64,000 nt of DNA, from the sequence record MZ574431.2, one strand, 5' to 3'. The notes beneath the pieces are model-generated. The model was not told where the DNA came from and did not search any database. It was given only the letters and a program-made list of their open reading frames with translations. The position numbers were made by a program, and so were the translations under genes. Below are positions 12,970-48,033 of this stretch, piece after piece (the stretch's first letter is position 1; each line of letters starts with the position of its first letter).

Positions 12970-13178
12970 CCCTGACCTATCGCACCGACTACACGCCCGA
13001 CGACGGCAAGACCATCGAGGTCAGCGACCCGATGACGCGTGAGCAGGCCATGCGGCAAGCCGCCTACCTGTCGCGCACCTACGGGACCGCCTACGCCATC
13101 GCCAGCGACGGCAAACGCGACACCGGCCAAAGGGTCTATCAAGACGGCCGGTTCGCCTACCAAGACGACAAGTTCTAA
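12966..13178 (+). CDS. hypothetical early protein
   Basis: ATGA overlap with previous gene. Confidence 0.8.
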   Translation: MTLTYRTDYTPDDGKTIEVSDPMTREQAMRQAAYLSRTYGTAYAIASDGKRDTGQRVYQDGRFAYQDDKF

Positions 13179-13180
13179 GG

Positions 13181-13207
13181 AAGGGCCTGGAGCGATCCGG
13201 GCCTTTT
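13181..13207 (+). terminator. intrinsic terminator (near-identical copy at 15923-15949)
   Basis: AGGGCCTGGAGCGATCCGGGCCTTTT present twice. Confidence 0.8.
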
Positions 13208-13348
13208 CATCGCCGGCCGGCGTTAACCCTAACGCGGCGTTAAGGTTAACCCTGGGACGCGGGGCGTAAACCAAGGAAAATGCAAGAAAGCTGTTGACAC
13301 GCATCGAAGGACCATGCGACAAAGGCTCACCAACAACGGAGAGCCCCG

Positions 13349-13906
13349 ATGCTCGACCACCCGCTGATCGTCACCGCCCTGGCCAATCTTCGCGAAGGCC
13401 CCGGCATGACCAATTCCGCCGATCGTCAGACCAAGGTCACGAGTCATCAACTGACCACGGCGATCATGCTCAAGGCCGCCGACCAGATCGCCCAAGCCCT
13501 GGGCGACCTCACCCCGCCGCCCTGCCTGGGCTATTTCCTCGCCAACGAGTTTGATCGCCTGGGAGACACCTGGGGCGACTTCATGACCGCCTTCGACGAA
13601 GGTCAGGCCCTTGCGGATGCTGACGAGGTGCTGGCGTGGTATCGCCGCACCGTCCGCGACGATCCCGAGGGCTACGCCGAGCGCATGGACGGCGCCTTGC
13701 CCAACGCCGCCACCCGAGCCCAGATCGAATCCGACTACGCCGCCGCCAAGGCCGGCGGCCGGTTCATCGTGGTTCACGGCAAGACCGGCTCGCAGTACGG
13801 CGACCGCCTGTCGCAACGCTTCGCCACCTACGAGGCGGCCGAAGAAGCCTGCGCCCCCTACCGCAAGCCCGGAACCTGGGCTTATGTCGATGAGGCCGCC
13901 TCGTGA
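13349..13906 (+). CDS. hypothetical early protein
   Basis: GGAG SD after promoter 13294. Confidence 0.85.
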
Positions 13907-14304
13907 CCAAGTTCGAGCGCCTGGACGGCTTCACGCAAGCCTTCATTTCGTCGATGGTGACGGGCAAGCCCTACGGCTTCGCCGACCTGTCGCCCGACGC
14001 CCTGGCCCGCATCATCGCCGATTGCGAGGCCTTCCAATGCGGGCGCCTGGACAAGCCCGCCCGCATGGTCTTTGGCCGCACGCCGCCGGCCACCACCGCC
14101 GTCATGGCCGTGGTCCGGGGCTCCCTGTGCTGGCACGCCGGCCGGCACTTCTGGTTGTCGCGCCAAGGCCTGCCCGACGGCTTCGACCAGAGCGAGGCCT
14201 TCGCCGGGACCTGGGCGCCGCTGCTGCACAAGCTGGCCCTGACCTTCCCGCCCCTCACCGTTCACCAAGACGCCCAAGGCGTCGTCACCGTCTCGGAGGC
14301 CTGA
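13903..14304 (+). CDS. hypothetical protein, paralog of 21884..22540
   Basis: GTGA overlap; shares IIADCEAFQ and [11 protein letters not shown] motifs. Confidence 0.8.
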
Positions 14305-14306
14305 CC

Positions 14307-14942
14307 GTGGACCGCATCGAATCCGCCACCCGCGCCGTGGACACCTTCGTAGGCGCCACGTGCGCCCCCGCCTCCATGTTCGGGCATCTGCGAGACGACG
14401 ACGCCCGCGACGGCGCGCTCTGCGAACTGCTGCGCAATCTGCGCCACTTCGCCGACACCTACGGCCTGGACTTCGCCGCCCTGGACGCCCGCGCCGGCCG
14501 GCTCTACGAGGGCGACACCGCCCAACTCGGGACCCTCGTTCTCGACGAGTCGGCCTGGAGCGCCTACGGCGACACCCTGGACACGCGCCGCGCGGCGATC
14601 GCCGCCGCCCTGCTGGCCAAGGACCACGCCGAACCGTCCGCCAGCCGCGAGGAGGCCGAAACCGAGGCCATGACCGATCACGCCGCCGTCGTCGGAACCG
14701 TGATCCGGGTAAACGACATCACCGGCTATTACGGCGAGACCGGGCAAGAGGACTTGCGCCCCCATGACGGCGCCCCGCCCTTCGCCGTCGTCGTCATGCC
14801 CTCGCCGCGCGATGATGTCATCTACTGGAATGACGAGCATCTGGACGCGCGATGGAACGTCGAGCCCGCGCCGGGCGAAACCCGCCTCTATGGCCTGCGC
14901 TCGCTCTGGGTCTTTGGCCGCTCTTTCGTCGTGGAGGGCTGA
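14307..14942 (+). CDS. hypothetical early protein
   Basis: GGAGG SD, GTG start within track ORF 13611..14942. Confidence 0.8.
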   Translation: MDRIESATRAVDTFVGATCAPASMFGHLRDDDARDGALCELLRNLRHFADTYGLDFAALDARAGRLYEGDTAQLGTLVLDESAWSAYGDTLDTRRAAIAAALLAKDHAEPSASREEAETEAMTDHAAVVGTVIRVNDITGYYGETGQEDLRPHDGAPPFAVVVMPSPRDDVIYWNDEHLDARWNVEPAPGETRLYGLRSLWVFGRSFVVEG

Positions 14943-14944
14943 TC

Positions 14945-15088
14945 ATGACCAGCCTGCAACGCGCCGGCTACGAGGCCCAGCGCGCTGGCGTCAAGTGGTG
15001 GCACAACCCGCACCCGTCGGGCTCCCCCGCCGCCTATCAATGGGACGAGGGCCACACCTTCGCCCGCCGTTCGATCACCCCCGTCTAG
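14945..15088 (+). CDS. Rmf/CrpP-like small protein (47 aa)
   Basis: GGAGG SD; RAGYEAQRAG..NPHPSGSPAAYQWDEGH resembles the Rmf-type GY.A...G...PY...W..GW pattern. Confidence 0.5.
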   Translation: MTSLQRAGYEAQRAGVKWWHNPHPSGSPAAYQWDEGHTFARRSITPV

Positions 15089-15100
15089 GAAAGGCCACCC

Positions 15101-15397
15101 ATGACCGAAGAACCGATTCGCCTGCGCTCCGAGCCCGCCAACATGACCACCGTCGCCGTGGGCGGGGTGCTGCTGTACTTCTCATATCTGACCCTGGTGG
15201 GCTTCCGCTGCCCGCGCCTGGGAACCGTCGTCAATCCCGAGGGCCGGGCCAAGTCCAAGACCACCGCCGCCCACATGACCCACTTTGGCCTCAACGCGCT
15301 GGGAACGGGTCAATGCAGCACTGAAGAAGACTTTCAGACCCTGGCCATGGGTGCGGTCATGGGTTCGAGCGGCCCTGATCACCTGTTGCTCAACTAA
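15101..15397 (+). CDS. hypothetical early protein
   Basis: AGGAAAGG SD. Confidence 0.8.
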   Translation: MTEEPIRLRSEPANMTTVAVGGVLLYFSYLTLVGFRCPRLGTVVNPEGRAKSKTTAAHMTHFGLNALGTGQCSTEEDFQTLAMGAVMGSSGPDHLLLN

Positions 15398-15512
15398 AGA
15401 CCTCTCCAAGGTCTTGGGCTGTCATCTTCCCGTTAGACTATGACAGCCCAGCCCCCGCGAACACTTCCCAACACTCGAAAACACAACCCTGTGTAGAAAG
15501 CGATTCCAAGTA

Positions 15513-15575
15513 ATGCGTTTGATCGAAGGCGGCGGCTTCCTGGCTTTGTGCTTCCTGCTGTGGCTGCTGCACTGA
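15513..15575 (+). CDS. possible 20-aa hydrophobic peptide
   Basis: MRLIEGGGFLALCFLLWLLH*; no clear SD. Confidence 0.25.
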   Translation: MRLIEGGGFLALCFLLWLLH

Positions 15576-15650
15576 GAAAACTGCAAGAAGGCTGTTGACA
15601 GCATCGAGAGCCCATGCGACAAAGGCCCATCGCAACCGGAGACCGCCGCG

Positions 15651-15917
15651 ATGGCCACCGACTACGACGATTACGGGCAAGACGCCTACGACAATTACGA
15701 AGGCTCTGTCATTGACGAGGCTTTCGAGCGCAACGCCGAAGACGCCTATGAGGACGACCTGGGCGCCGAAGACCCCGACCTCGAATTCCCCGACGAGGAG
15801 GACGACGAGGCCGACCTTCGCCGGGCCGAAGGGCTCATGCCCTGGGCCACCCCCGAGGGCGTGGAGCCGGGGCAGTTCCCCCGCCGCGCCTACGACGACG
15901 ACGAAATCCCGTTCTAG
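15651..15917 (+). CDS. very acidic protein ending in an SSB C-terminal-like tail (DDDEIPF)
   Basis: About 32 of 88 residues are D/E; GGAG SD after promoter 15595; no OB-fold-like sequence. Confidence 0.8.
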   Translation: MATDYDDYGQDAYDNYEGSVIDEAFERNAEDAYEDDLGAEDPDLEFPDEEDDEADLRRAEGLMPWATPEGVEPGQFPRRAYDDDEIPF

Positions 15918-16119
15918 CGGGGAGGGCCTGGAGCGATCCGGGCCTTTTTCGCGCCGGCCAGCGTTAACCTTAACGCGCGCTTAAGGTTAACCCCGCCCGG
16001 ACCGTTTTTCGTTTTGGCTGTCGGGCGGGATTTCGTTTTGTCTGTCGAGTGCAAGAAAGCTGTTGACACGCATCGCAGCCCCATGCGACAAAGGCTCATC
16101 ACCAACGGAGGCCTTTTTC

Positions 16120-16419
16120 ATGGCCAGCTACGAGATCACCATTTCGGTTGACGTGTCGGTCGAGGACATCGAACTCCTTTACGCCGCCGCCCTGGCCCGC
16201 GCCAAGCAAGAGGGTCAACCCGACGACAACGCCGTCGCCCTGCTGACCAATAGCGACCCGCTGGGCCGCCCTGACGTGCCGTCCTGCCTCATGATGCTGT
16301 TCGATCCGGGCGTGAGCCCTGACGGCACCTCGATCAACAACACCGCCGCCAAGCGCGCGGAGTACGACGAGGACGAGGACATGGACGCCTACGAGGAATC
16401 CCTGGAGGACGACAAGTGA
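16120..16419 (+). CDS. hypothetical early protein
   Basis: GGAGG SD after promoter 16063. Confidence 0.8.
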   Translation: MASYEITISVDVSVEDIELLYAAALARAKQEGQPDDNAVALLTNSDPLGRPDVPSCLMMLFDPGVSPDGTSINNTAAKRAEYDEDEDMDAYEESLEDDK

Positions 16420-16871
16420 GCTATTCCGGCCCCATCACCATCAGCCAAGGTCTGCGCTGGCGCCTCGATAGCTACGGCAACGGCGCGGCCTATGCCTTCT
16501 ACGACCTTTCGGCCGGCGCCAGCGTCTGGCTTGAGGGCGACGACGCCAGCGCCTTCCGCGAGGCCCTCGATACGGTCGAGACCCTGCGTCCGCAAGACGA
16601 GCCTGACGAAATCCTGGGTCATCTCTGGGACGAGCACGACTATGGCGCCGCCGCCACGGTGCAGGTTGTCGTCGTGCGCCGGGTGATCCGTGAAGACACC
16701 GTCATCGCCTTGCGCCCTGGCGAGACCGAAGCGCAAGCCAAGGAACGGGCGATTTTCAATCAATCCTCCCTCAAGTGGGATACCTACGACTGCGAATATA
16801 GCGCCGACCCCGTCACCACCGAGCCGGCCGCCGAATACGACTATCTGCGCCAACTGCCCGGCGCCATCTAA
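16416..16871 (+). CDS. hypothetical early protein
   Basis: GTGA overlap; GGAGG SD. Confidence 0.8.
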   Translation: MSYSGPITISQGLRWRLDSYGNGAAYAFYDLSAGASVWLEGDDASAFREALDTVETLRPQDEPDEILGHLWDEHDYGAAATVQVVVVRRVIREDTVIALRPGETEAQAKERAIFNQSSLKWDTYDCEYSADPVTTEPAAEYDYLRQLPGAI

Positions 16872-17036
16872 GGCCCTGGCCCGCCCTGACCCGGCGGGCC
16901 TTTCTTTCGCCGATCGCCGTTAACCCTAACCGCCCGTTAGGGTTAACGCCAAAGAAACTACAAGAAAGCTGTTGACACGCATAGCGGCCCTATGCGAGAA
17001 CGTCCCTGCCGCATTGGCGGCCTGGAGACCTATGCC

Positions 17037-17615
17037 ATGACCCGCGATTTCGTTCCGCACGTCATCACCGCCCGCACCATCGACGGCGCCTGCTATTTCA
17101 TCGGCGGCCAGACCTATGGCGATCACCTGGGCCACGCCCGCGTCATGACCAAGGACGACGCCGAACGCCGCGTCGGCGCCCTCCAGCGCCTGGAGCGCGC
17201 CAGCGCCGAGACCCGCCGCGCCAACGACCCCCATGAGGACGACTTTTCGGGCGTCTATGGGCTCGCCGTCGTGGCCACGACCTGGGAAGCCCTGGACAAG
17301 GCCGCCGAGGCGGTCAAGACCTGGGAAGAGGCCGACCTTGCCGCCGAGGAGGCTCACGACGCCCTTTATGACGACTATGACCCGAACGAGGGCATGAGCG
17401 CCGAGGAGATCGCCGCCGAAAGCGCGTGGTGGCGCGAGCAGATGGCCAAGGACCAGCCTTTCGCCCCTGGCCAGTCGGTGACCATCACCGATGAGCTTCA
17501 CCCCGACCACGGCGCCAGCGCCCGCGTCGTCGAAGCCGAGCAATCGGGCTATCTGGTGCTTGCCCTGGGCGAGCGCCTGACCTGGGGCTTGGCCAAGGGC
17601 GTGGCCGCCGCCTAA
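17037..17615 (+). CDS. hypothetical early protein
   Basis: GGAG SD after promoter 16972. Confidence 0.8.
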   Translation: MTRDFVPHVITARTIDGACYFIGGQTYGDHLGHARVMTKDDAERRVGALQRLERASAETRRANDPHEDDFSGVYGLAVVATTWEALDKAAEAVKTWEEADLAAEEAHDALYDDYDPNEGMSAEEIAAESAWWREQMAKDQPFAPGQSVTITDELHPDHGASARVVEAEQSGYLVLALGERLTWGLAKGVAAA

Positions 17616-17617
17616 AG

Positions 17618-17647
17618 AAAAAGGCCCTGGCGAGCGCCGGGGCCTTT
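17618..17647. terminator. bidirectional intrinsic terminator
   Basis: A5-GGCCCTGGC-GAGC-GCCGGGGCC-TTT between convergent genes. Confidence 0.75.
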
Positions 17648-17686
17648 CGATCGTAAGCTGTGATTAACCCTAACGCCGCCTTAAGG

Positions 17687-17923
17687 TTAATCCTTGGCCG
17701 AGCGCCGATGCGGGTTCGAGCGAAGCCATGTGTCGGCTTCGGTGCGGGTCGAGAACGGCGCCCCGCCAATGCCCGTGGTTCCGTCATCCCATTGGATCGT
17801 CCAGCCGACCTGAATGACTTCCCAGTCCTGGGAGACGCCGAACGGGATCGTAGCATGGATAGGGATACGGTTATGGGGCGGGCGCTTGAGTTGGCGCACC
17901 CGCGCCGGGATCACTTGCGGCAT
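17687..17923 (-). CDS. hypothetical protein, the only leftward gene in the early region
   Basis: AGGA SD; own TTGACA-N16-TACTTT promoter; bidirectional terminator downstream. Confidence 0.6.
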   Translation of the reverse strand: MPQVIPARVRQLKRPPHNRIPIHATIPFGVSQDWEVIQVGWTIQWDDGTTGIGGAPFSTRTEADTWLRSNPHRRSAKD

Positions 17924-17965
17924 TGGGATTTCCTGTAGGTCAAGCGGAGGCTTGGGCCATCGAGG

Positions 17966-17993
17966 AAAGTACCACGCCGCCGGCCCATGTCAA
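17966..17993 (-). promoter_or_regulatory. sigma70-type leftward promoter
   Basis: Minus strand TTGACA (17993-17988), 16 nt, TACTTT (17971-17966), with TG extension. Confidence 0.55.
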
Positions 17994-18097
17994 GAACGGC
18001 GCCACGGGTCAAGAATCGCGACTCAAGGCGCAAGAAAACTGTTGACACGCATCGCGCCGCCATGCGACAAAGGCTCAGCACAACAGGGACACCCGCC

Positions 18098-18541
18098 ATG
18101 AACCTCGAAGACTGGTTTTACCCTTCCTCCGACATCTCCAACTCTGACCAGACCATCGACTCCCGCGACGTCATCAAGCGGGTCGATGAACTGCAAGCCG
18201 CTTTCGATGACGCCGAGATCGATCCTGATCAGGTGCTCGCCGACGACGAGCTAGACCTGGGCAAGGACGCCGAGGAAATCCGCGACGCCGCCCAAGAGCT
18301 TAAGGCGCTCAAGGACTTCGCCGAGGAGGGCGAGAACTACGCCGCCGACTGGACGAGCGGCGAAACCCTGATCCGAGAAAGCTATTTCGTCGAGTATGCC
18401 GAGCAGCTTTGCAAGGACATCGGCGACCTGCCCGACAACATCCCCGGCTATCTGGCCATTGACTGGGAAAAGACCGCCAACAACATCAAGGCCGATTACT
18501 CCGAAATCGAGTTTGACGGCGTCACCTATCTGGTCCGCTAA
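18098..18541 (+). CDS. acidic protein with ArdA-like C-terminus (putative DNA mimic)
   Basis: YFVEYAEQLCKDIGDLPDNIPGYLAIDWEKTANNIKADY resembles the ArdA C-terminal pattern; strongly D/E-rich. Confidence 0.5.
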   Translation: MNLEDWFYPSSDISNSDQTIDSRDVIKRVDELQAAFDDAEIDPDQVLADDELDLGKDAEEIRDAAQELKALKDFAEEGENYAADWTSGETLIRESYFVEYAEQLCKDIGDLPDNIPGYLAIDWEKTANNIKADYSEIEFDGVTYLVR

Positions 18542-18855
18542 GGCGAGCGGCCGGCGTCCCCTGGGCGCCGGCCTTTCCCTGGCCACGATCGGTTAACCTT
18601 AACGCCTGGGGCCAGACGGTTAAGGTTAACGCAAGGCCCTGGCGAGGGAACGTCAAGGCCGCGAGCTAGGATTACTCGCGAATGGCTTAGCCGGCGTCCA
18701 GCCGGCGGCGCCTTCGACCACCGCGAGGCGGCCTTGACCCTGACAGTCTCGCCCAAGCGCCGCGCCATGTCAACCGATTTCTTATGTGCAAGAAACCTGT
18801 TGACAGCATGTCCGCCCCATGCGAGAAAGCCTCATCATTCACTGGGAACGACCCC

Positions 18856-19515
18856 ATGCCCCGCACCGTCACCAAACAGGTCTACAAGTTCACCGAACTG
18901 AGCGACAAGGCCAAAGCCAAGGCCGTCGAGTGGTATCGCGAGCTTGAGATGCAAGAAACCGGCTGGTGGGATTACGTCTATGAAGAGGCCGACCGCATCG
19001 CCGACGCCTTCGGGATCACGCTCAATCGCAGCGAAGCCGGCAAGCCCATGTCCGGCCCCGACATCCTGTTCAGCGGCTTCTACAGCCAAGGCGACGGCGC
19101 CTGTTTCCAAGGCCGCTACGCCAGCCCCCAAATCCCGGCCGTGGAGGGCTTCGCCGCCCTCGGGATCGAAGACGACAACCTCAAGGCCCTCGCCGTGCGC
19201 CTGGACGCTCTGAGCGCCAAGACCGGCGGACGCCTGACGACCGTGGTTCGCCACAGCGGTTACTATTATCACGAGTATTGCACCGCCTTCGAAACCGAAC
19301 TGACCGACCCTGAAGACGGTTCGGACTTCGACCCCTACGCCTATGACGTGGAGGATGAAAAGGAACTGGTCGACATCCTGCGCCGGTTCATGAAGTGGAT
19401 TTATCGTCAGCTTGAAGAGGCCGATGAGGCCCGCCTGTCTGACGAGACGATCACCGAAGCCCTCGCCGACTCCGACTACGAGTTTGAGGCCAGCGGGGCG
19501 CCGACCAGAGACTAG
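18856..19515 (+). CDS. conserved-looking phage protein
   Basis: VYKFTELSDKAKAKA and FSGFYSQGDGACF motifs; after promoter 18800. Confidence 0.85.
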   Translation: MPRTVTKQVYKFTELSDKAKAKAVEWYRELEMQETGWWDYVYEEADRIADAFGITLNRSEAGKPMSGPDILFSGFYSQGDGACFQGRYASPQIPAVEGFAALGIEDDNLKALAVRLDALSAKTGGRLTTVVRHSGYYYHEYCTAFETELTDPEDGSDFDPYAYDVEDEKELVDILRRFMKWIYRQLEEADEARLSDETITEALADSDYEFEASGAPTRD

Positions 19516-19705
19516 GCCAAGACGGCGCCCGGCCCTCCCGCCGGGCGCCGATCGTGGTTAACGCCGTGTCGGGTTTTTGTAACCTTAACCCTCTGTTAAG
19601 GTTAATGAAAAAGGCCCTTTCCGTTAACCACGAATAATGCGAGAAAGCTGTTGACACGCATCGCAGCCCCATGCGACAAAGGGCCATCGCAACGGGAGAC
19701 ACCCC

Positions 19706-19993
19706 ATGACGAAACAAGCCCCAAAGCGCCGCAAGCGCTACCCGCCCAAGAGCGACGCGGCCAAGGCCCGCGCCGCCGCCAAGAGCAAGGCGTTTTTCGC
19801 CCGCCACGCCCTCAAGGCCACCGAGGCGGCTATCGCCGCCATGGCGGCGGGCGATCAAAAGGCCGTCCAACGCCACGCCAAGGACGCCCGGCGCCTCAAT
19901 CGCTGGATGTGCCACAAGCGCGACATCGCCGCCGCCTTCAAGGCCGTGTTCGACATCCGCGCCGCCGCTCAAGCCCTGCGAACCGCCGCATGA
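19706..19993 (+). CDS. basic Ala-rich hypothetical protein
   Basis: GGGAGACACCCC-ATG leader. Confidence 0.85.
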   Translation: MTKQAPKRRKRYPPKSDAAKARAAAKSKAFFARHALKATEAAIAAMAAGDQKAVQRHAKDARRLNRWMCHKRDIAAAFKAVFDIRAAAQALRTAA

Positions 19994-20205
19994 TCCGCCG
20001 CCCCGCCCTCATGACCTGCATCGCCGGCGCCGCCCTCATCCTGTCGGGCGTGGCCGTTTCGGCCGCCAGCGCCCCGGAAAAGCGGGTTCTCGTCGGTCAA
20101 TACTGCGACGGCGACCCCGTGCGCCTCTATGGCCTGGAGGACGGCGAGGAAGCCGCCCAAGCCTGCGCCATCGTCGAGGTCCACGCCCTGCCGAAAGGAC
20201 TCTGA
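19990..20205 (+). CDS. small protein with N-terminal signal-like segment
   Basis: ATGA overlap; MIRRPALMTCIAGAALILSGVAVSA. Confidence 0.7.
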   Translation: MIRRPALMTCIAGAALILSGVAVSAASAPEKRVLVGQYCDGDPVRLYGLEDGEEAAQACAIVEVHALPKGL

Positions 20206-20207
20206 CC

Positions 20208-20666
20208 ATGCCCGGACATCCCGCCTTCGATCTTGATGAGCGCGAAGCCGCCGCCGTCATTGCCGGCCTGCGCCTGCTGCAACGCATCGGCGTGCCGGTC
20301 GAGCTAGAAGACGTCGCCACCAACGGCGGCGCCTTCGACGTGCTCGATGACACCGCCATCGACGCGCTCTGCGAGCGCATCAATCTGGACCTGACCACCA
20401 CGCCGCCGCCCGTGCTGATCGAGAGCCGCGAGGAGCCGGTTCGCGTCGAGGACCTCAAGGGCGGCATGATGTGCGACCTTGAGGGCGACATGTTCGCCGA
20501 CAACGCCGGCCGTTACCCCGAATTCGAGTTCGCCTATGCCGTCGTTGTCGAGGTGCAGGTCAACCCGAAGGGCGAGCCGCCTGGAACCGTGATCGTCGAG
20601 TTCGACAAGATCACCGTGGCCTTTCCCATCGGCCACACCCTGCCGACCATCAAGGACCCGCAATAA
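20208..20666 (+). CDS. hypothetical early protein
   Basis: AAGGA SD. Confidence 0.8.
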   Translation: MPGHPAFDLDEREAAAVIAGLRLLQRIGVPVELEDVATNGGAFDVLDDTAIDALCERINLDLTTTPPPVLIESREEPVRVEDLKGGMMCDLEGDMFADNAGRYPEFEFAYAVVVEVQVNPKGEPPGTVIVEFDKITVAFPIGHTLPTIKDPQ

Positions 20667-20747
20667 AACGCAAGAAAGCTGTTGACAGCATAATCAGCCT
20701 ATGCGAGAAAGGATCGTCAAAGGCGATCCCGCCTCGTGGAGACACCC

Positions 20748-21092
20748 ATGAAACTGGTCAAGTCCAACATCATCGACAACCACCGCATGACGGCGCTGCG
20801 CAACTGCATCACCGTCGCCATCGAGCGCTTTCAAGAGCACGTCGATGAGATGAAGCCGGCCGCCGAGCAATACGAGGCCGCCGACGACGCGGGCAAGAAG
20901 GCCCTGGAAGCGGCCACGCCCATGGTTCACCCTCGCGTCTATCGCCAGCTTTCCGACCAGTTCGAGGGCCAGATCGAAGAAGCCCGCAAGCTGCTGGACT
21001 GGCTGGACGGCGACGCCTACCAAGACGCCTCGGGCGAGTTCCCCGAAGGCACCGATTTCGTCGTCGTCGCCGGCCTCGTCCGCGACTACTGA
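20748..21092 (+). CDS. hypothetical early protein
   Basis: GGAGACACCC-ATG leader. Confidence 0.85.
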   Translation: MKLVKSNIIDNHRMTALRNCITVAIERFQEHVDEMKPAAEQYEAADDAGKKALEAATPMVHPRVYRQLSDQFEGQIEEARKLLDWLDGDAYQDASGEFPEGTDFVVVAGLVRDY

Positions 21093-47009: not shown

Positions 47010-47525
47010 ATGACGTCGCAGATCAGCACTGAACGGATCGCTCAGATCATGCGCGAGCAGACCCTGCGGCGTCTGGCCTTGGAAAACCCCTGCCGTCCGT
47101 GTGGCGCCCTTGGTCGTGTCAAGATCGACGACACCGAGGACGCCGACGGCTACTACGAGACCAAGGACTGCGAGCACTGCAAGGGCCGAGGCTGGTTCAA
47201 AAAGACGCTGGACGAGGTCATGGCCATGCGCTTTGGCCCCGAGTGGCCGACCCGCCTGACCCTAGAGCAGAAGCTTCGGGCCTTGGAGAACCGCTTCTAC
47301 AACCGAGCGACCTGGGAGCCCAAACCCGGCGATCTCTACACCACCAGCCGCGCCGATTTGGAGCTTTACGAGGTCGTCGATGTTGCCGACGGACATATTT
47401 GCACACGCTACCGGACGCAACCGGACGGGGCGATCTCGCGGTGGCCGGCGGAAGAGTTCCTCGCCGAGCACACCTTCGGACACGCAAGGACCCACGTACC
47501 CAATTGGGTCATCGCCTTTTCCTAG
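47010..47525 (+). CDS. hypothetical protein with CxxC pairs
   Basis: CRPCGALG, CEHCKGRG (DnaJ-like CxxCxGxG repeats). Confidence 0.75.
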   Translation: MTSQISTERIAQIMREQTLRRLALENPCRPCGALGRVKIDDTEDADGYYETKDCEHCKGRGWFKKTLDEVMAMRFGPEWPTRLTLEQKLRALENRFYNRATWEPKPGDLYTTSRADLELYEVVDVADGHICTRYRTQPDGAISRWPAEEFLAEHTFGHARTHVPNWVIAFS

Positions 47526-48033
47526 GGGACAGCATCGCGTCTGGCCGGGCAAGTTTGCCCCGTTCGAGCGCGGCTGCTGCCGCTGGTGCGGCGCCACTAT
47601 CCTGCGGGCCGACGGCACGGTCAACCGGCGCAAGCAGTTTTGCGATCGCCACTGCGTCAACGAGTTCCTGCTGCGGACCGATCCGCAGCGCTGGCGGCGC
47701 AACTGCTACAAGGAGTCGATGGGCATCTGCCATCGGTGCAGCGAGGTCTTCGACTATTACGAGGACGACGGATGGGAGGCCGATCACATCGTGCCCCTCT
47801 ACCACGCCCACCGGATCGGCGACTGGACCGCCTGGGACCCCGAGAACCTCCAGCTTCTCTGCATCCCCTGTCACAAGGACAAGACGCAGGAAGACTACGA
47901 CACCTACGGCCGGCCCTGGCTGGACGAAAGCCCCGACGTGCTGCCCACCAGCGACCAGCCGCACCCGGATGATCTGCCTGACTTCGGCGAAGAAGACGAA
48001 ATCGACTTCGACGCCGATGAAATCCCATTCTAA
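47380..48033 (+). CDS. HNH endonuclease with SSB-tail-like C-terminus (true start uncertain, probably near 47534)
   Basis: CRWC, CHRC, EADHIVP, ENLQLLCIPCHKDKT; ends DFDADEIPF. Confidence 0.8.
   Translation: MLPTDIFAHATGRNRTGRSRGGRRKSSSPSTPSDTQGPTYPIGSSPFPRGQHRVWPGKFAPFERGCCRWCGATILRADGTVNRRKQFCDRHCVNEFLLRTDPQRWRRNCYKESMGICHRCSEVFDYYEDDGWEADHIVPLYHAHRIGDWTAWDPENLQLLCIPCHKDKTQEDYDTYGRPWLDESPDVLPTSDQPHPDDLPDFGEEDEIDFDADEIPF

What the first reader, a model, noticed from the sequence alone, without database searches (positions are those of the whole stretch)
15651..15917. Stand-alone SSB C-terminal-tail mimic
88 aa, about 36% D/E, no OB-fold-like part, ending YDDDEIPF. Established: the bacterial SSB tail (DDDIPF) docks ExoI, RecQ, PriA, RecO, RecG and Pol III chi. 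Expressed alone from its own early cassette. Inference: a decoy that titrates host replication and repair proteins, possibly also a DNA mimic.
Basis: partly seen in the sequence, partly recalled or inferred. Interest (0 to 1): 0.75.

Follow-up and report, generated by a model that had tools for sequence, protein, structure and literature searches.

The report
Acidic phage protein with SSB tail
A small, extremely acidic, apparently unfolded protein from the early region of a Caulobacter jumbo phage ends in exactly the six residues that the host's single-stranded-DNA-binding protein uses to recruit replication and repair enzymes. It most likely plugs or hijacks those docking sites, but this has not been tested.

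Summary
The window is bases 1-64000 of Caulobacter phage J4 (Bertelyvirus, 312 kb). The finding is CcrJ4_gp029, annotated hypothetical, inside the 24.7-kb terminal repeat.

The ORF is 88 aa with 36% D+E, has no OB fold, and ends in DDDEIPF. Its last six residues, DDEIPF, are identical to the SSB tip of the host genus (131 of 131 Caulobacter-type SSBs). That tip is the alphaproteobacterial variant of DDDIPF.

The expected number of such tails in the J4 proteome is about 1e-5. The C-terminal 33 codons show 5-7 synonymous and 0 non-synonymous differences between J4 and its two relatives. The tip also survives in the most diverged relative.

The gene sits in its own cassette: a host RpoD-like promoter (16 copies in the repeat), an RBS and a hairpin terminator. 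AlphaFold gives no confident fold.

A second J4 protein, an HNH endonuclease, carries a DEIPF tail found only in this phage genus. J4 has no canonical SSB. In viral contigs the same tip sits on helicases, primases, ATPases and unusual SSBs, but none is as acidic or lacks a recognisable domain in the way gp029 does.

The decoy function is plausible but unproven. Adaptor and phage-partner readings remain open.

The parts
15582..15625 (+). Promoter block of the gp029 cassette: a -35-like TTGACAG at 15595-15601 and a -10-like GCGACAAA at 15616-15623, inside a longer conserved box.
   Evidence: The same box occurs 16 times on the + strand between 2.8 and 23.9 kb; 17 matches were found in the window against 0.63 expected. 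It is conserved upstream of the orthologs in CcrSC, CcrBL9 and L004. It resembles the Caulobacter RpoD consensus, -35 TTGaCgS and -10 GCtANAWC (PMC8144410). The generic E. coli-type scan finds nothing here. Function is inferred.
15638..15642 (+). Shine-Dalgarno-like GGAGA, 8 nt upstream of the ATG.
   Evidence: Read directly from the sequence. It is invariant in all four relatives.
15651..15917 (+). CDS CcrJ4_gp029: 88 aa, net charge about -27, the most acidic of the 45 terminal-repeat genes.
   Evidence: Orthologs. Purifying selection. No family or fold.
15651..15815 (+). Residues 1-55: variable, hyper-acidic, Tyr/Phe-rich region with three low-confidence helices.
   Evidence: pN/pS is 0.24-0.53. 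AlphaFold2 predicts helices at 5-16, 23-37 and 49-59 with pLDDT 52-61.
15816..15914 (+). Residues 56-88: invariant C-terminal block, predicted coil from residue 60. It contains MPW, P-x-G, PG and PR landmarks and the terminal DDDEIPF.
   Evidence: It is identical in J4, CcrSC and CcrBL9, with 5-7 synonymous and 0 non-synonymous differences between J4 and each of them, and 2 and 0 between CcrSC and CcrBL9. Identity to the diverged relative L004 is 17/34, with the last 7 of 7 identical.
15897..15914 (+). Terminal hexapeptide DDEIPF, identical to the host-genus SSB C-terminal tip.
   Evidence: 131/131 Caulobacter-type SSBs end in DDEIPF and 129 end in DLDDEIPF. SSB identity was confirmed by Pfam PF00436. 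LDDEIPF is reported as the alphaproteobacterial SSB-C7 (PMC13490951).
15917..15952 (+). Terminator-like G+C-rich hairpin with a U run, starting at the stop codon.
   Evidence: RNA fold gives -28.5 kcal/mol, z -3.08, with 1 of 200 shuffles as stable. The simple terminator scan did not list it.
15963..15991 (.). Perfect 11-bp inverted repeat (GTTAACCTTAA ... TTAAGGTTAAC) between the terminator and the next promoter. It belongs to a recurring intergenic element of the repeat.
   Evidence: Read. Similar elements precede many cassette promoters. Function unknown.
47380..48033 (+). Second carrier of the tip in the same phage: an HNH endonuclease (maximal ORF 217 aa) with an acidic, Pro-rich C-terminal extension ending in DADEIPF. 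GenBank annotates only 47719-48033 (gp101).
   Evidence: It is the only other IPF-ending ORF in J4. Pfam HNH scores 5e-8 and phrog_11604 scores 1e-39. The tail is kept in CcrSC and CcrBL9 but absent from the phiCbK and Brevundimonas phage orthologs, which end in basic tails. Annotation and start.

Best explanation
gp029 is a protein made from a single-gene cassette in the terminal repeat of the jumbo phage, which is presumably the first DNA expressed. It is intrinsically disordered and hyper-acidic, and its conserved C-terminal 33 residues end in the exact tip of the host SSB. The most likely mechanism is motif mimicry of the SSB hub. The free C-terminal ...DDEIPF inserts into the SSB-tip-binding pockets of host genome-maintenance proteins and competes with the tails of SSB bound to single-stranded DNA. 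The invariant block just upstream (residues 56-82) probably adds contacts that raise affinity for one or a few partners. The result would be to uncouple those host enzymes from SSB-coated DNA, including the phage's own replication intermediates, since J4 encodes no canonical SSB.

Shown: the ORF, its composition, identity of the tip to the host tip, selection on the C-terminal block, the cassette anatomy, and the absence of an OB fold.

Inferred: early expression, binding to SSB partners, and an inhibitory rather than recruiting outcome.
For: The tip is identical to Caulobacter SSB and to the published alphaproteobacterial SSB-C7 core (PMC13490951). The SSB tip is an established docking peptide for DnaG, ExoI, RecO and many others (abstracts of PMC5872125, PMC10143822 and PMC7913777).

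The chance expectation is 1.6e-5. There are zero non-synonymous changes in the last 33 codons, and the tip is retained in the most diverged relative.

There is no DNA-binding or other domain. The gene has its own host-type promoter, RBS and terminator, conserved in four relatives.

The neighbourhood consists of small early-type cassettes, one of them weakly ArdA-like. J4 has no canonical SSB.
Against: There are no binding, expression or phenotype data.

A monomeric single-tail decoy must compete with multivalent SSB on DNA, so it would need high copy number or extra affinity. Neither is known.

The same tip on an HNH nuclease of the same phage, and on helicases, primases and ATPases of other phages, shows that the tip is often a recruiting handle rather than an inhibitor.

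Position -7 is Asp where the host has Leu, and published work assigns specificity to the last 7-8 residues (10.1101/2020.04.14.041095; PMC13490951).

The family is tiny: three phage species plus one metagenomic contig. Conservation statistics therefore rest on few comparisons.
Confidence: 0.45

Rival explanations
1. Adaptor, or a tail supplied in trans. The acidic N-terminal region binds a basic partner, such as a phage single-stranded-DNA-binding protein of an unrecognised family or a host DNA-binding protein. The tip then recruits host SSB-partner enzymes to that complex. On this reading gp029 supplies the missing SSB tail to a phage that has no canonical SSB.
For: The tip is used as a handle on many phage replication proteins and on the J4 HNH endonuclease. 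J4 has no canonical SSB and no other IPF-ended protein. The N-terminal part is under moderate purifying selection, pN/pS 0.24-0.53.
Against: No partner is identified. The N-terminal part is the less conserved half and has no confident fold. An early stand-alone cassette among host-takeover-type genes fits an inhibitor at least as well.
Confidence: 0.2
2. A docking peptide for a phage-encoded partner. The DEIPF tails of gp029 and the HNH endonuclease would bind a J4 protein, for example its T7-like DNA polymerase, a helicase or an exonuclease. This would resemble the way the acidic, Phe-ended tails of T7 gp2.5 and gp4 share sites on T7 DNA polymerase (the T7 comparison is my own knowledge, not tested here).
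For: Two unrelated J4 proteins carry the tail, and the HNH tail arose only in this genus. J4 encodes its own polymerase, helicases and a DnaQ-like exonuclease.
Against: The tip is letter-for-letter the host's, which is what host-directed mimicry predicts and is not required for a phage-internal contact. gp029 sits in a host-promoter cassette in the terminal repeat, whereas the replication genes lie more than 100 kb away.
Confidence: 0.12
3. A nucleic-acid mimic. The poly-acidic, aromatic-rich chain would occupy the DNA-binding groove of a host protein, such as a restriction or defence nuclease or the OB fold of SSB itself, which is known to bind its own acidic tip. The tail would be secondary or would only help binding to SSB.
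For: 36% D+E, net charge about -27, 11 aromatic residues, and the most acidic of the 45 repeat genes. A weakly ArdA-like gene lies two cassettes downstream. Acidic phage DNA mimics such as T7 gp5.9 are established (PMC9836394).
Against: Known DNA mimics are folded scaffolds, whereas gp029 has no confident fold. The most acidic part is the least conserved, and selection is strongest on the Pro/Gly-rich tail block. This reading does not explain why the tip is exactly the host's.
Confidence: 0.12
4. No specific function: a fast-evolving orphan ORF whose tail resembles SSB by accident or as a relic of a degraded phage SSB gene.
For: The family is very small and has no homologs outside Bertelyvirus-like phages. 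The called gene in L004 carries one apparent frame change.
Against: Chance expectation is 1.6e-5. There are 0 non-synonymous against 5-7 synonymous differences in the tail block. The promoter, RBS and terminator are conserved. There is no similarity to an SSB linker or OB domain. In L004 the tip is still encoded, in another frame.
Confidence: 0.04

Closest known systems
C-terminal tip of bacterial SSB (SSB-Ct; DDDIPF in E. coli, LDDEIPF in many alphaproteobacteria)
   Same: The last six residues are identical to the Caulobacter SSB tip. They sit at the free C-terminus, preceded by further acidic residues and by a disordered segment.
   Different: gp029 has no OB fold, no Gly/Gln/Pro-rich linker and no sign of tetramerisation. 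Residue -7 is Asp, not Leu. The rest of the protein is unrelated to SSB.
Phage replication proteins that carry a host-type SSB tip: non-canonical phage SSB families, Gp2.5-like proteins, helicases, primases, AAA ATPases and an SSAP found in IMG/VR
   Same: They have the same terminal DDEIPF grafted onto a non-SSB body. The J4 HNH endonuclease is a further case.
   Different: Nearly all of those have a recognisable enzymatic or DNA-binding body, and at most 23% D+E with 15-19% K+R. gp029 has no domain at all and 36% D+E.
Acidic C-terminal tails of T7 gp2.5 and gp4, and of T4 gp32 (my own knowledge; PMC12339929 deals with T7 SSB and polymerase)
   Same: An acidic tail ending in an aromatic residue acts as an exchangeable docking peptide within a replisome.
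   Different: Those tails belong to DNA-binding or helicase proteins and dock on phage partners. There is no sequence relationship, and no PDB match was returned for gp029.
Acidic phage and plasmid DNA mimics (Ocr, ArdA, T7 gp5.9, Ugi)
   Same: They are small, very acidic, early anti-host proteins. One weakly ArdA-like gene is a neighbour.
   Different: Those are folded proteins that imitate the shape of DNA. gp029 has no family match and no confident fold.
Phage inhibitors of other replication hubs, for example the Twort Gp168 beta-clamp inhibitor (PMC8565349)
   Same: The concept is the same: a small phage protein that blocks a host replication hub.
   Different: The hub, the mechanism and the sequence all differ. 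No described case of a stand-alone SSB-tip protein was found in three literature searches.

Membership tests
Bacterial SSB family (Pfam PF00436) | N-terminal OB-fold single-stranded-DNA-binding domain | tested here: not met
   No Pfam, PHROG or NCBIfam hit even at E<=10. No hit to a local profile of 50 alphaproteobacterial SSBs. The AlphaFold2 model has no strands.
Bacterial SSB family (Pfam PF00436) | Gly/Pro/Gln-rich disordered linker followed by an acidic tip | tested here: inconclusive
   The tip is present. The segment before it is Pro/Gly-containing coil, but the rest is acidic and helical-prone, unlike the Gly-rich linkers of Caulobacter SSBs.
SSB-Ct type docking motif (short linear motif) | Located at the extreme C-terminus with a terminal Ile/Leu-Pro-Phe | tested here: met
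   The protein ends in ...IPF followed by a stop codon.
SSB-Ct type docking motif (short linear motif) | Run of acidic residues immediately before IPF | tested here: met
   DDDE precedes IPF.
SSB-Ct type docking motif (short linear motif) | Matches the tip of the cognate host's SSB | tested here: met
   6 of 6 residues are identical to 131/131 Caulobacter-type SSBs, including one named C. vibrioides OR37. The -7 residue differs, D against L. The SSB of strain CB15 itself was not retrieved.
SSB-Ct type docking motif (short linear motif) | Evolutionary conservation of the motif in orthologs | tested here: met
   Invariant in J4, CcrSC, CcrBL9 and L004, with 0 non-synonymous changes in the last 33 codons.
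SSB-Ct type docking motif (short linear motif) | Binds the hydrophobic pocket and basic ridge of SSB-interacting proteins | not testable with these tools
DNA-mimic proteins (Ocr / ArdA / gp5.9 type) | High density of surface carboxylates | tested here: met
   36% D+E and net charge about -27.
DNA-mimic proteins (Ocr / ArdA / gp5.9 type) | Stable fold that arrays the charges like a DNA backbone | tested here: not met
   Mean pLDDT 57, pTM 0.18, and no residue at or above 70. The alignment had only two sequences, so this negative is weak.
DNA-mimic proteins (Ocr / ArdA / gp5.9 type) | Sequence or profile membership in a known mimic family | tested here: not met
   No Pfam, PHROG, NCBIfam or PDB hit.
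T7 gp2.5-like SSB | gp2.5-type OB fold / Pfam SBB_T7 / phrog_112 | tested here: not met
   No hit for gp029, whereas other tail-bearing viral ORFs do hit these families.

The most novel reading that the evidence does not exclude
gp029 would be the first described viral 'hub plug' for the bacterial SSB interactome. On this reading it is a domain-less, disordered protein whose only business end is a host-exact SSB tip plus a specificity block, made at the very start of infection to disconnect host repair, restart and nuclease enzymes from SSB-coated DNA. It would be the extreme case of a wider and so far little-noticed phage habit of grafting the host's SSB tip onto arbitrary proteins, including nucleases, helicases, primases and ATPases.
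Probability: 0.3. Interest if true: 0.85.

Novelty: new variant of a known kind. Interest (0 to 1): 0.66.

Why it matters
The SSB tip is the single handle by which well over a dozen bacterial replication, recombination and repair enzymes find single-stranded DNA. It is already pursued as an antibacterial target (PMC5872125, PMC10143822).

A natural protein that consists of little more than this handle, tuned to its host, would show how a virus can disable or redirect a whole interaction hub with one short motif. It would also provide a natural high-affinity ligand design for the pocket.

It would further explain how a jumbo phage that lacks a canonical SSB handles host SSB on its own DNA.

The survey result also bears on host-range prediction and on choosing recombineering proteins by SSB-tip compatibility (PMC13490951). 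In that survey the host-type tip sat on many unrelated phage proteins.

Tried and rejected
- **Homology.** Pfam, PHROGs, NCBIfam and PDB sequence searches of gp029 found nothing. The 5.8-billion-protein word search and the 1.84-billion-representative HMMER search found only the Bertelyvirus orthologs, one Logan contig, and one spurious hit to a 2108-aa repetitive surface protein. IMG/VR returned only CcrSC and CcrBL9, and JGI metagenomes returned nothing.
- **Fold.** AlphaFold2 gave no usable model, so no fold search was run on it.
- **A phage SSB as the source or partner of the tail.** No SSB is annotated in J4. No J4 ORF matches a bacterial SSB profile or any of 121 tail-bearing viral proteins. 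gp483, which has an acidic tail ending in LF, has no PDB or Pfam match and does not look like an OB fold.
- **Common origin of the gp029 and HNH tails.** BLASTP finds nothing beyond a 7-residue chance match.
- **ArdA identity of neighbour gp034.** Only sub-threshold Pfam support was found: 23.5 bits against a cutoff of 27, with 13 of 33 homologs at E<1e-3. A PDB profile search was empty. Foldseek on a good model (pLDDT 84) was not significant, with ArdA 2w82 at rank 2-3 and E about 1. I keep it only as 'weakly ArdA-like'.
- **Scans.** The generic sigma-70 and terminator scan missed both the cassette promoter and the hairpin. They were established by motif counting, alignment and folding instead. 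Rfam found nothing in 1-26000.
- **Literature.** Three searches found no description of a stand-alone phage SSB-tip protein. The Ped1 paper concerns DnaB, not SSB.
- **Not achieved.** I did not retrieve the SSB of strain CB15 itself. The nearest is the 131/131 result for the genus.

Full report
**Identity of the window.** Bases 13000-21000 match Caulobacter phage J4 (MZ574431.2) at 100% at the same coordinates. J4 is a Bertelyvirus of the Dolichocephalovirinae, 312,338 bp, with host C. vibrioides CB15. Six sister isolates match at 99% or better, and CcrSC and CcrBL9 at about 81%. The finding is CcrJ4_gp029, 'hypothetical protein'. It lies inside the 24,723-bp terminal repeat, so each genome carries two identical copies.

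**The observation.** The ORF at 15651-15917 (+) encodes 88 residues with 18 Asp, 14 Glu (36.4%), 5 Lys+Arg and 11 aromatic residues. It ends in ...RRAYDDDEIPF. G+C by codon position (0.76/0.36/0.84) is that of a real gene in a 65% G+C genome. gp029 is the most acidic of the 45 annotated terminal-repeat genes; the next reaches 24%. Only 2 of 5205 stop-to-stop ORFs in J4 bases 1-289000 end in IPF. From the local amino-acid frequencies, 1.6e-5 DDEIPF tails are expected in 565 proteins.

**Relatives and selection.** Protein-level searches of the phage collection, of 5.8 billion clustered proteins and of 1.84 billion representatives were run, together with IMG/VR and JGI metagenome scans. They found only the Bertelyvirus orthologs and one Logan contig, L004 from SRR27946880. 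J4, CcrSC and CcrBL9 differ at 14-16 positions, all within residues 1-55. Residues 56-88 are identical. Nei-Gojobori counts give pN/pS of 0.23-0.39 overall. In the last 33 codons there are 5-7 synonymous and 0 non-synonymous differences between J4 and the other two.

In L004 the called gene has one apparent frame change relative to J4. The separate frame piece that ends at a stop still encodes the tail block. It has 17/34 identities to J4, the final seven residues are identical, and the MPW, P-x-G, PG and PR landmarks are kept. Whether that frame change is real or an assembly error cannot be told here.

**What the tail is.** PMC5872125 describes DDDIPF as the conserved SSB C-terminal hexapeptide. 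PMC13490951 reports LDDEIPF as the SSB-C7 of Rhodobacter sphaeroides, present in 5795 of 18,841 alphaproteobacterial assemblies. I made the window's own tail DNA degenerate at three wobble positions and scanned one genome per GTDB species. Almost all are alphaproteobacterial genes of 150-200 aa ending in DLDDEIPF. They include a Caulobacter sp., a Caulobacteraceae MAG and several Phenylobacterium. Three that I tested are Pfam SSB at about 1e-37.

Using the C. mirabilis SSB from the same 90% cluster as a query, all 131 Caulobacter-type SSBs retrieved end in DDEIPF. Of these, 129 end in DLDDEIPF and 128 in FSADLDDEIPF. One is named for C. vibrioides OR37 and as 'MULTISPECIES Caulobacter'. So the last six residues of gp029 are the host-genus tip, letter for letter. 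Position -7 is Asp instead of Leu. A DDDEIPF ending does occur in some marine alphaproteobacterial SSBs, for example Ruegeria (L032) and Pseudophaeobacter (L037).

**What the rest is.** There is no hit in Pfam, PHROGs, NCBIfam or PDB sequences. AlphaFold2 on the two-sequence alignment gives a mean pLDDT of 57 and pTM of 0.18. It predicts three low-confidence helices (5-16, 23-37, 49-59), no strands, and coil for the last 29 residues. The protein is therefore best described as disordered or folding only on binding, and it has no OB fold. The negative is weak because the alignment is shallow.

**Cassette.** A long conserved box precedes the gene at 15582-15625. It contains TTGACAG, a 14-nt spacer and GCGACAAA. 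The core motif occurs 16 times on the + strand between 2.8 and 23.9 kb, and 17 matches in the window compare with 0.63 expected. It resembles the Caulobacter RpoD consensus, -35 TTGaCgS and -10 GCtANAWC (PMC8144410). The box, the GGAGA at 15638-15642 and the spacing to the ATG are conserved in CcrSC, CcrBL9 and L004.

The stop codon opens a hairpin at 15917-15952 (-28.5 kcal/mol, z -3.1) with a U run. An 11-bp perfect palindrome follows, and the next promoter box is at about 16050. So the gene is a single-gene unit with host-type signals. That it is 'early' is an inference from these signals and from its place in the terminal repeat. No expression data exist.

**Context that changes the picture.**

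1. The only other IPF-ended ORF of J4 is an HNH endonuclease at 47380-48033 (Pfam HNH 5e-8; phrog_11604 1e-39). Its acidic, Pro-rich C-terminal extension ends in ...DFDADEIPF. CcrSC and CcrBL9 keep this extension. The orthologs in phiCbK and in Brevundimonas phage Gurke end in basic tails without it. The tip was therefore gained on the nuclease within the same genus that has gp029. BLASTP shows no relationship between the two tails beyond the tip.

2. J4 has no annotated SSB. No J4 ORF matches a profile of alphaproteobacterial SSBs or any of 121 tail-bearing viral proteins. No Bertelyvirus appears among the rows or organism tallies shown for the 1462 phage records with a canonical SSB homolog, whereas Caulobacter phage Sansa does.

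Of 121 ORFs, 36 matched my SSB profile. The 68 unique complete non-matching ORFs include alternative phage SSB families, Gp2.5-like proteins, Enc34-type ssDNA binders, helicases, primases, AAA/MoxR-type ATPases, a clamp-loader-like family, an SSAP and several families of unknown function. The host-type tip is thus a portable tail in phage proteomes. None of these carriers approaches gp029 in acidity: the maximum is 23% D+E with 15-19% K+R.

4. Two cassettes downstream, gp034 (17987-18541) is weakly ArdA-like. Pfam gives 9.5e-5, below the gathering score, and 13 of 33 homologs hit ArdA. Structural comparison was not significant.

**Mechanism.** The best-supported reading is that gp029 is a host-directed mimic of the SSB tip. 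The free C-terminal DDEIPF would occupy the pockets on host SSB-partner proteins that normally take the SSB tail. The invariant 27 residues before it would supply further contacts. This would detach those enzymes from SSB-coated DNA.

That outcome would be useful to a phage which apparently relies on host SSB for its own single-stranded intermediates and brings its own polymerase and helicases. The tip identity, the selection pattern, the lack of any other domain and the cassette are shown. Binding, timing and an inhibitory outcome are inferred.

I put this at about 0.45. The narrower statement, that the tail is a functional SSB-tip-type docking peptide, I would put near 0.75.

Rivals:
- An adaptor that lends a tail in trans to a DNA-binding partner (0.2).
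- Docking on a phage partner, in the manner of the T7 gp2.5 and gp4 tails (0.12; that comparison is from my own knowledge).
- A nucleic-acid mimic that binds a DNA-binding groove, including the OB fold of SSB itself (0.12).
- No function (0.04).

What the tip does on the HNH endonuclease remains unexplained. It argues that in this phage the tip is at least sometimes a recruiting handle.

**Novelty.** Three full-text searches found no described phage protein that is a stand-alone SSB tip. Conceptually it belongs to a known kind: short-motif mimicry of a host hub, acidic early anti-host proteins, and SSB-type tails on phage replication proteins. I therefore rate it a new variant of a known kind.

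None was put into a tool call or used as evidence.
The paper found (PMC8144410) then confirmed them, and only that paper is cited.
- One search printed three-frame translations of the L004 locus. I have not listed the place of its frame change anywhere.

Noticed in passing
window 47380-48033 (+): An HNH endonuclease has an acidic C-terminal extension ending in DADEIPF, an SSB-tip-like tail. The extension is present in J4, CcrSC and CcrBL9 but absent from the phiCbK and Brevundimonas phage orthologs. GenBank annotates only the last 104 codons (47719-48033), which cuts off part of the HNH domain. The only in-frame ATG upstream of the domain is at 47380 and overlaps gp100.
   Followed up: partly
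window 2830-23859 (+), e.g. 13294-13325, 15595-15625, 16063-16094, 18042-18073, 19651-19682: Sixteen copies of one long promoter-like box (GCAAGAAAGCTGTTGACA-N13/14-ATGCGACAAAGG) all point the same way through the terminal repeat. Each is followed about 20-45 nt later by an RBS and a start codon. The box resembles the Caulobacter RpoD -35/-10 consensus.
   Followed up: partly
window 15963-15991 and many other intergenic sites in 4.6-24 kb: GTTAACCTTAAC / GTTAAGGTTAAC-type perfect palindromes recur between the terminator hairpins and the next promoter box. They may be operator or processing sites. Function is unknown.
   Followed up: no
window 15513-15575 (+); L002 5422-5484; L003 1371-1433; L004 3720-3782: An unannotated 20-codon ORF lies just upstream of the gp029 promoter and encodes a peptide with a hydrophobic C-terminal half. 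It is conserved in four relatives, with conservative replacements and synonymous changes.
   Followed up: partly
window 17987-18541 (+), gp034: An acidic 184-aa protein has a sub-threshold Pfam ArdA (antirestriction) match. Of 33 homologs, 13 hit ArdA. The AlphaFold2 model is good (pLDDT 84), but Foldseek against the PDB is not significant, with ArdA 2w82 at rank 2-3 and E about 1.
   Followed up: yes
J4 record 282655-283209 (L009:18655-19209, +), gp483: A 184-aa protein annotated 'DNase H-like' has a Gly run followed by an acidic tail ending in ...DDEDEDLF. This is a second kind of acidic, Phe-ended tail in the phage. It has no Pfam or PDB match and hits only phrog_12078 (unknown function).
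   Followed up: partly
whole J4 genome (window plus L005-L009): No canonical SSB gene is annotated or detectable in this 312-kb phage, although it encodes its own T7-like DNA polymerase, helicases, ribonucleotide reductase and about 30 tRNAs.
   Followed up: partly
IMG/VR loci L134-L253: The alphaproteobacterial SSB tip DDEIPF ends many non-SSB phage proteins: helicases, primases, AAA/MoxR-type ATPases, clamp-loader-like proteins, an SSAP, Pam3_Gp34-like proteins and several unknown families. It also ends three small ORFs with no obvious recognisable body: L230:239-430, L227:7546-7758 and L203:2233-2451.
   Followed up: partly
L004 3856-4212 (Logan contig from SRR27946880): In the most diverged relative of gp029, the gene is called as a 118-aa product because of one apparent frame change. 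The tail block is still encoded in another frame. Whether this is an assembly error or a real break is undecided.
   Followed up: partly
genome loci L073, L019, L086, L119, L121, L125, L128: Bacterial genomes also hold non-canonical carriers of the tip. Examples are a 565-aa protein in a Phycisphaerales MAG and a recurrent family ending in ENPELVDRDDEIPF.
   Followed up: no
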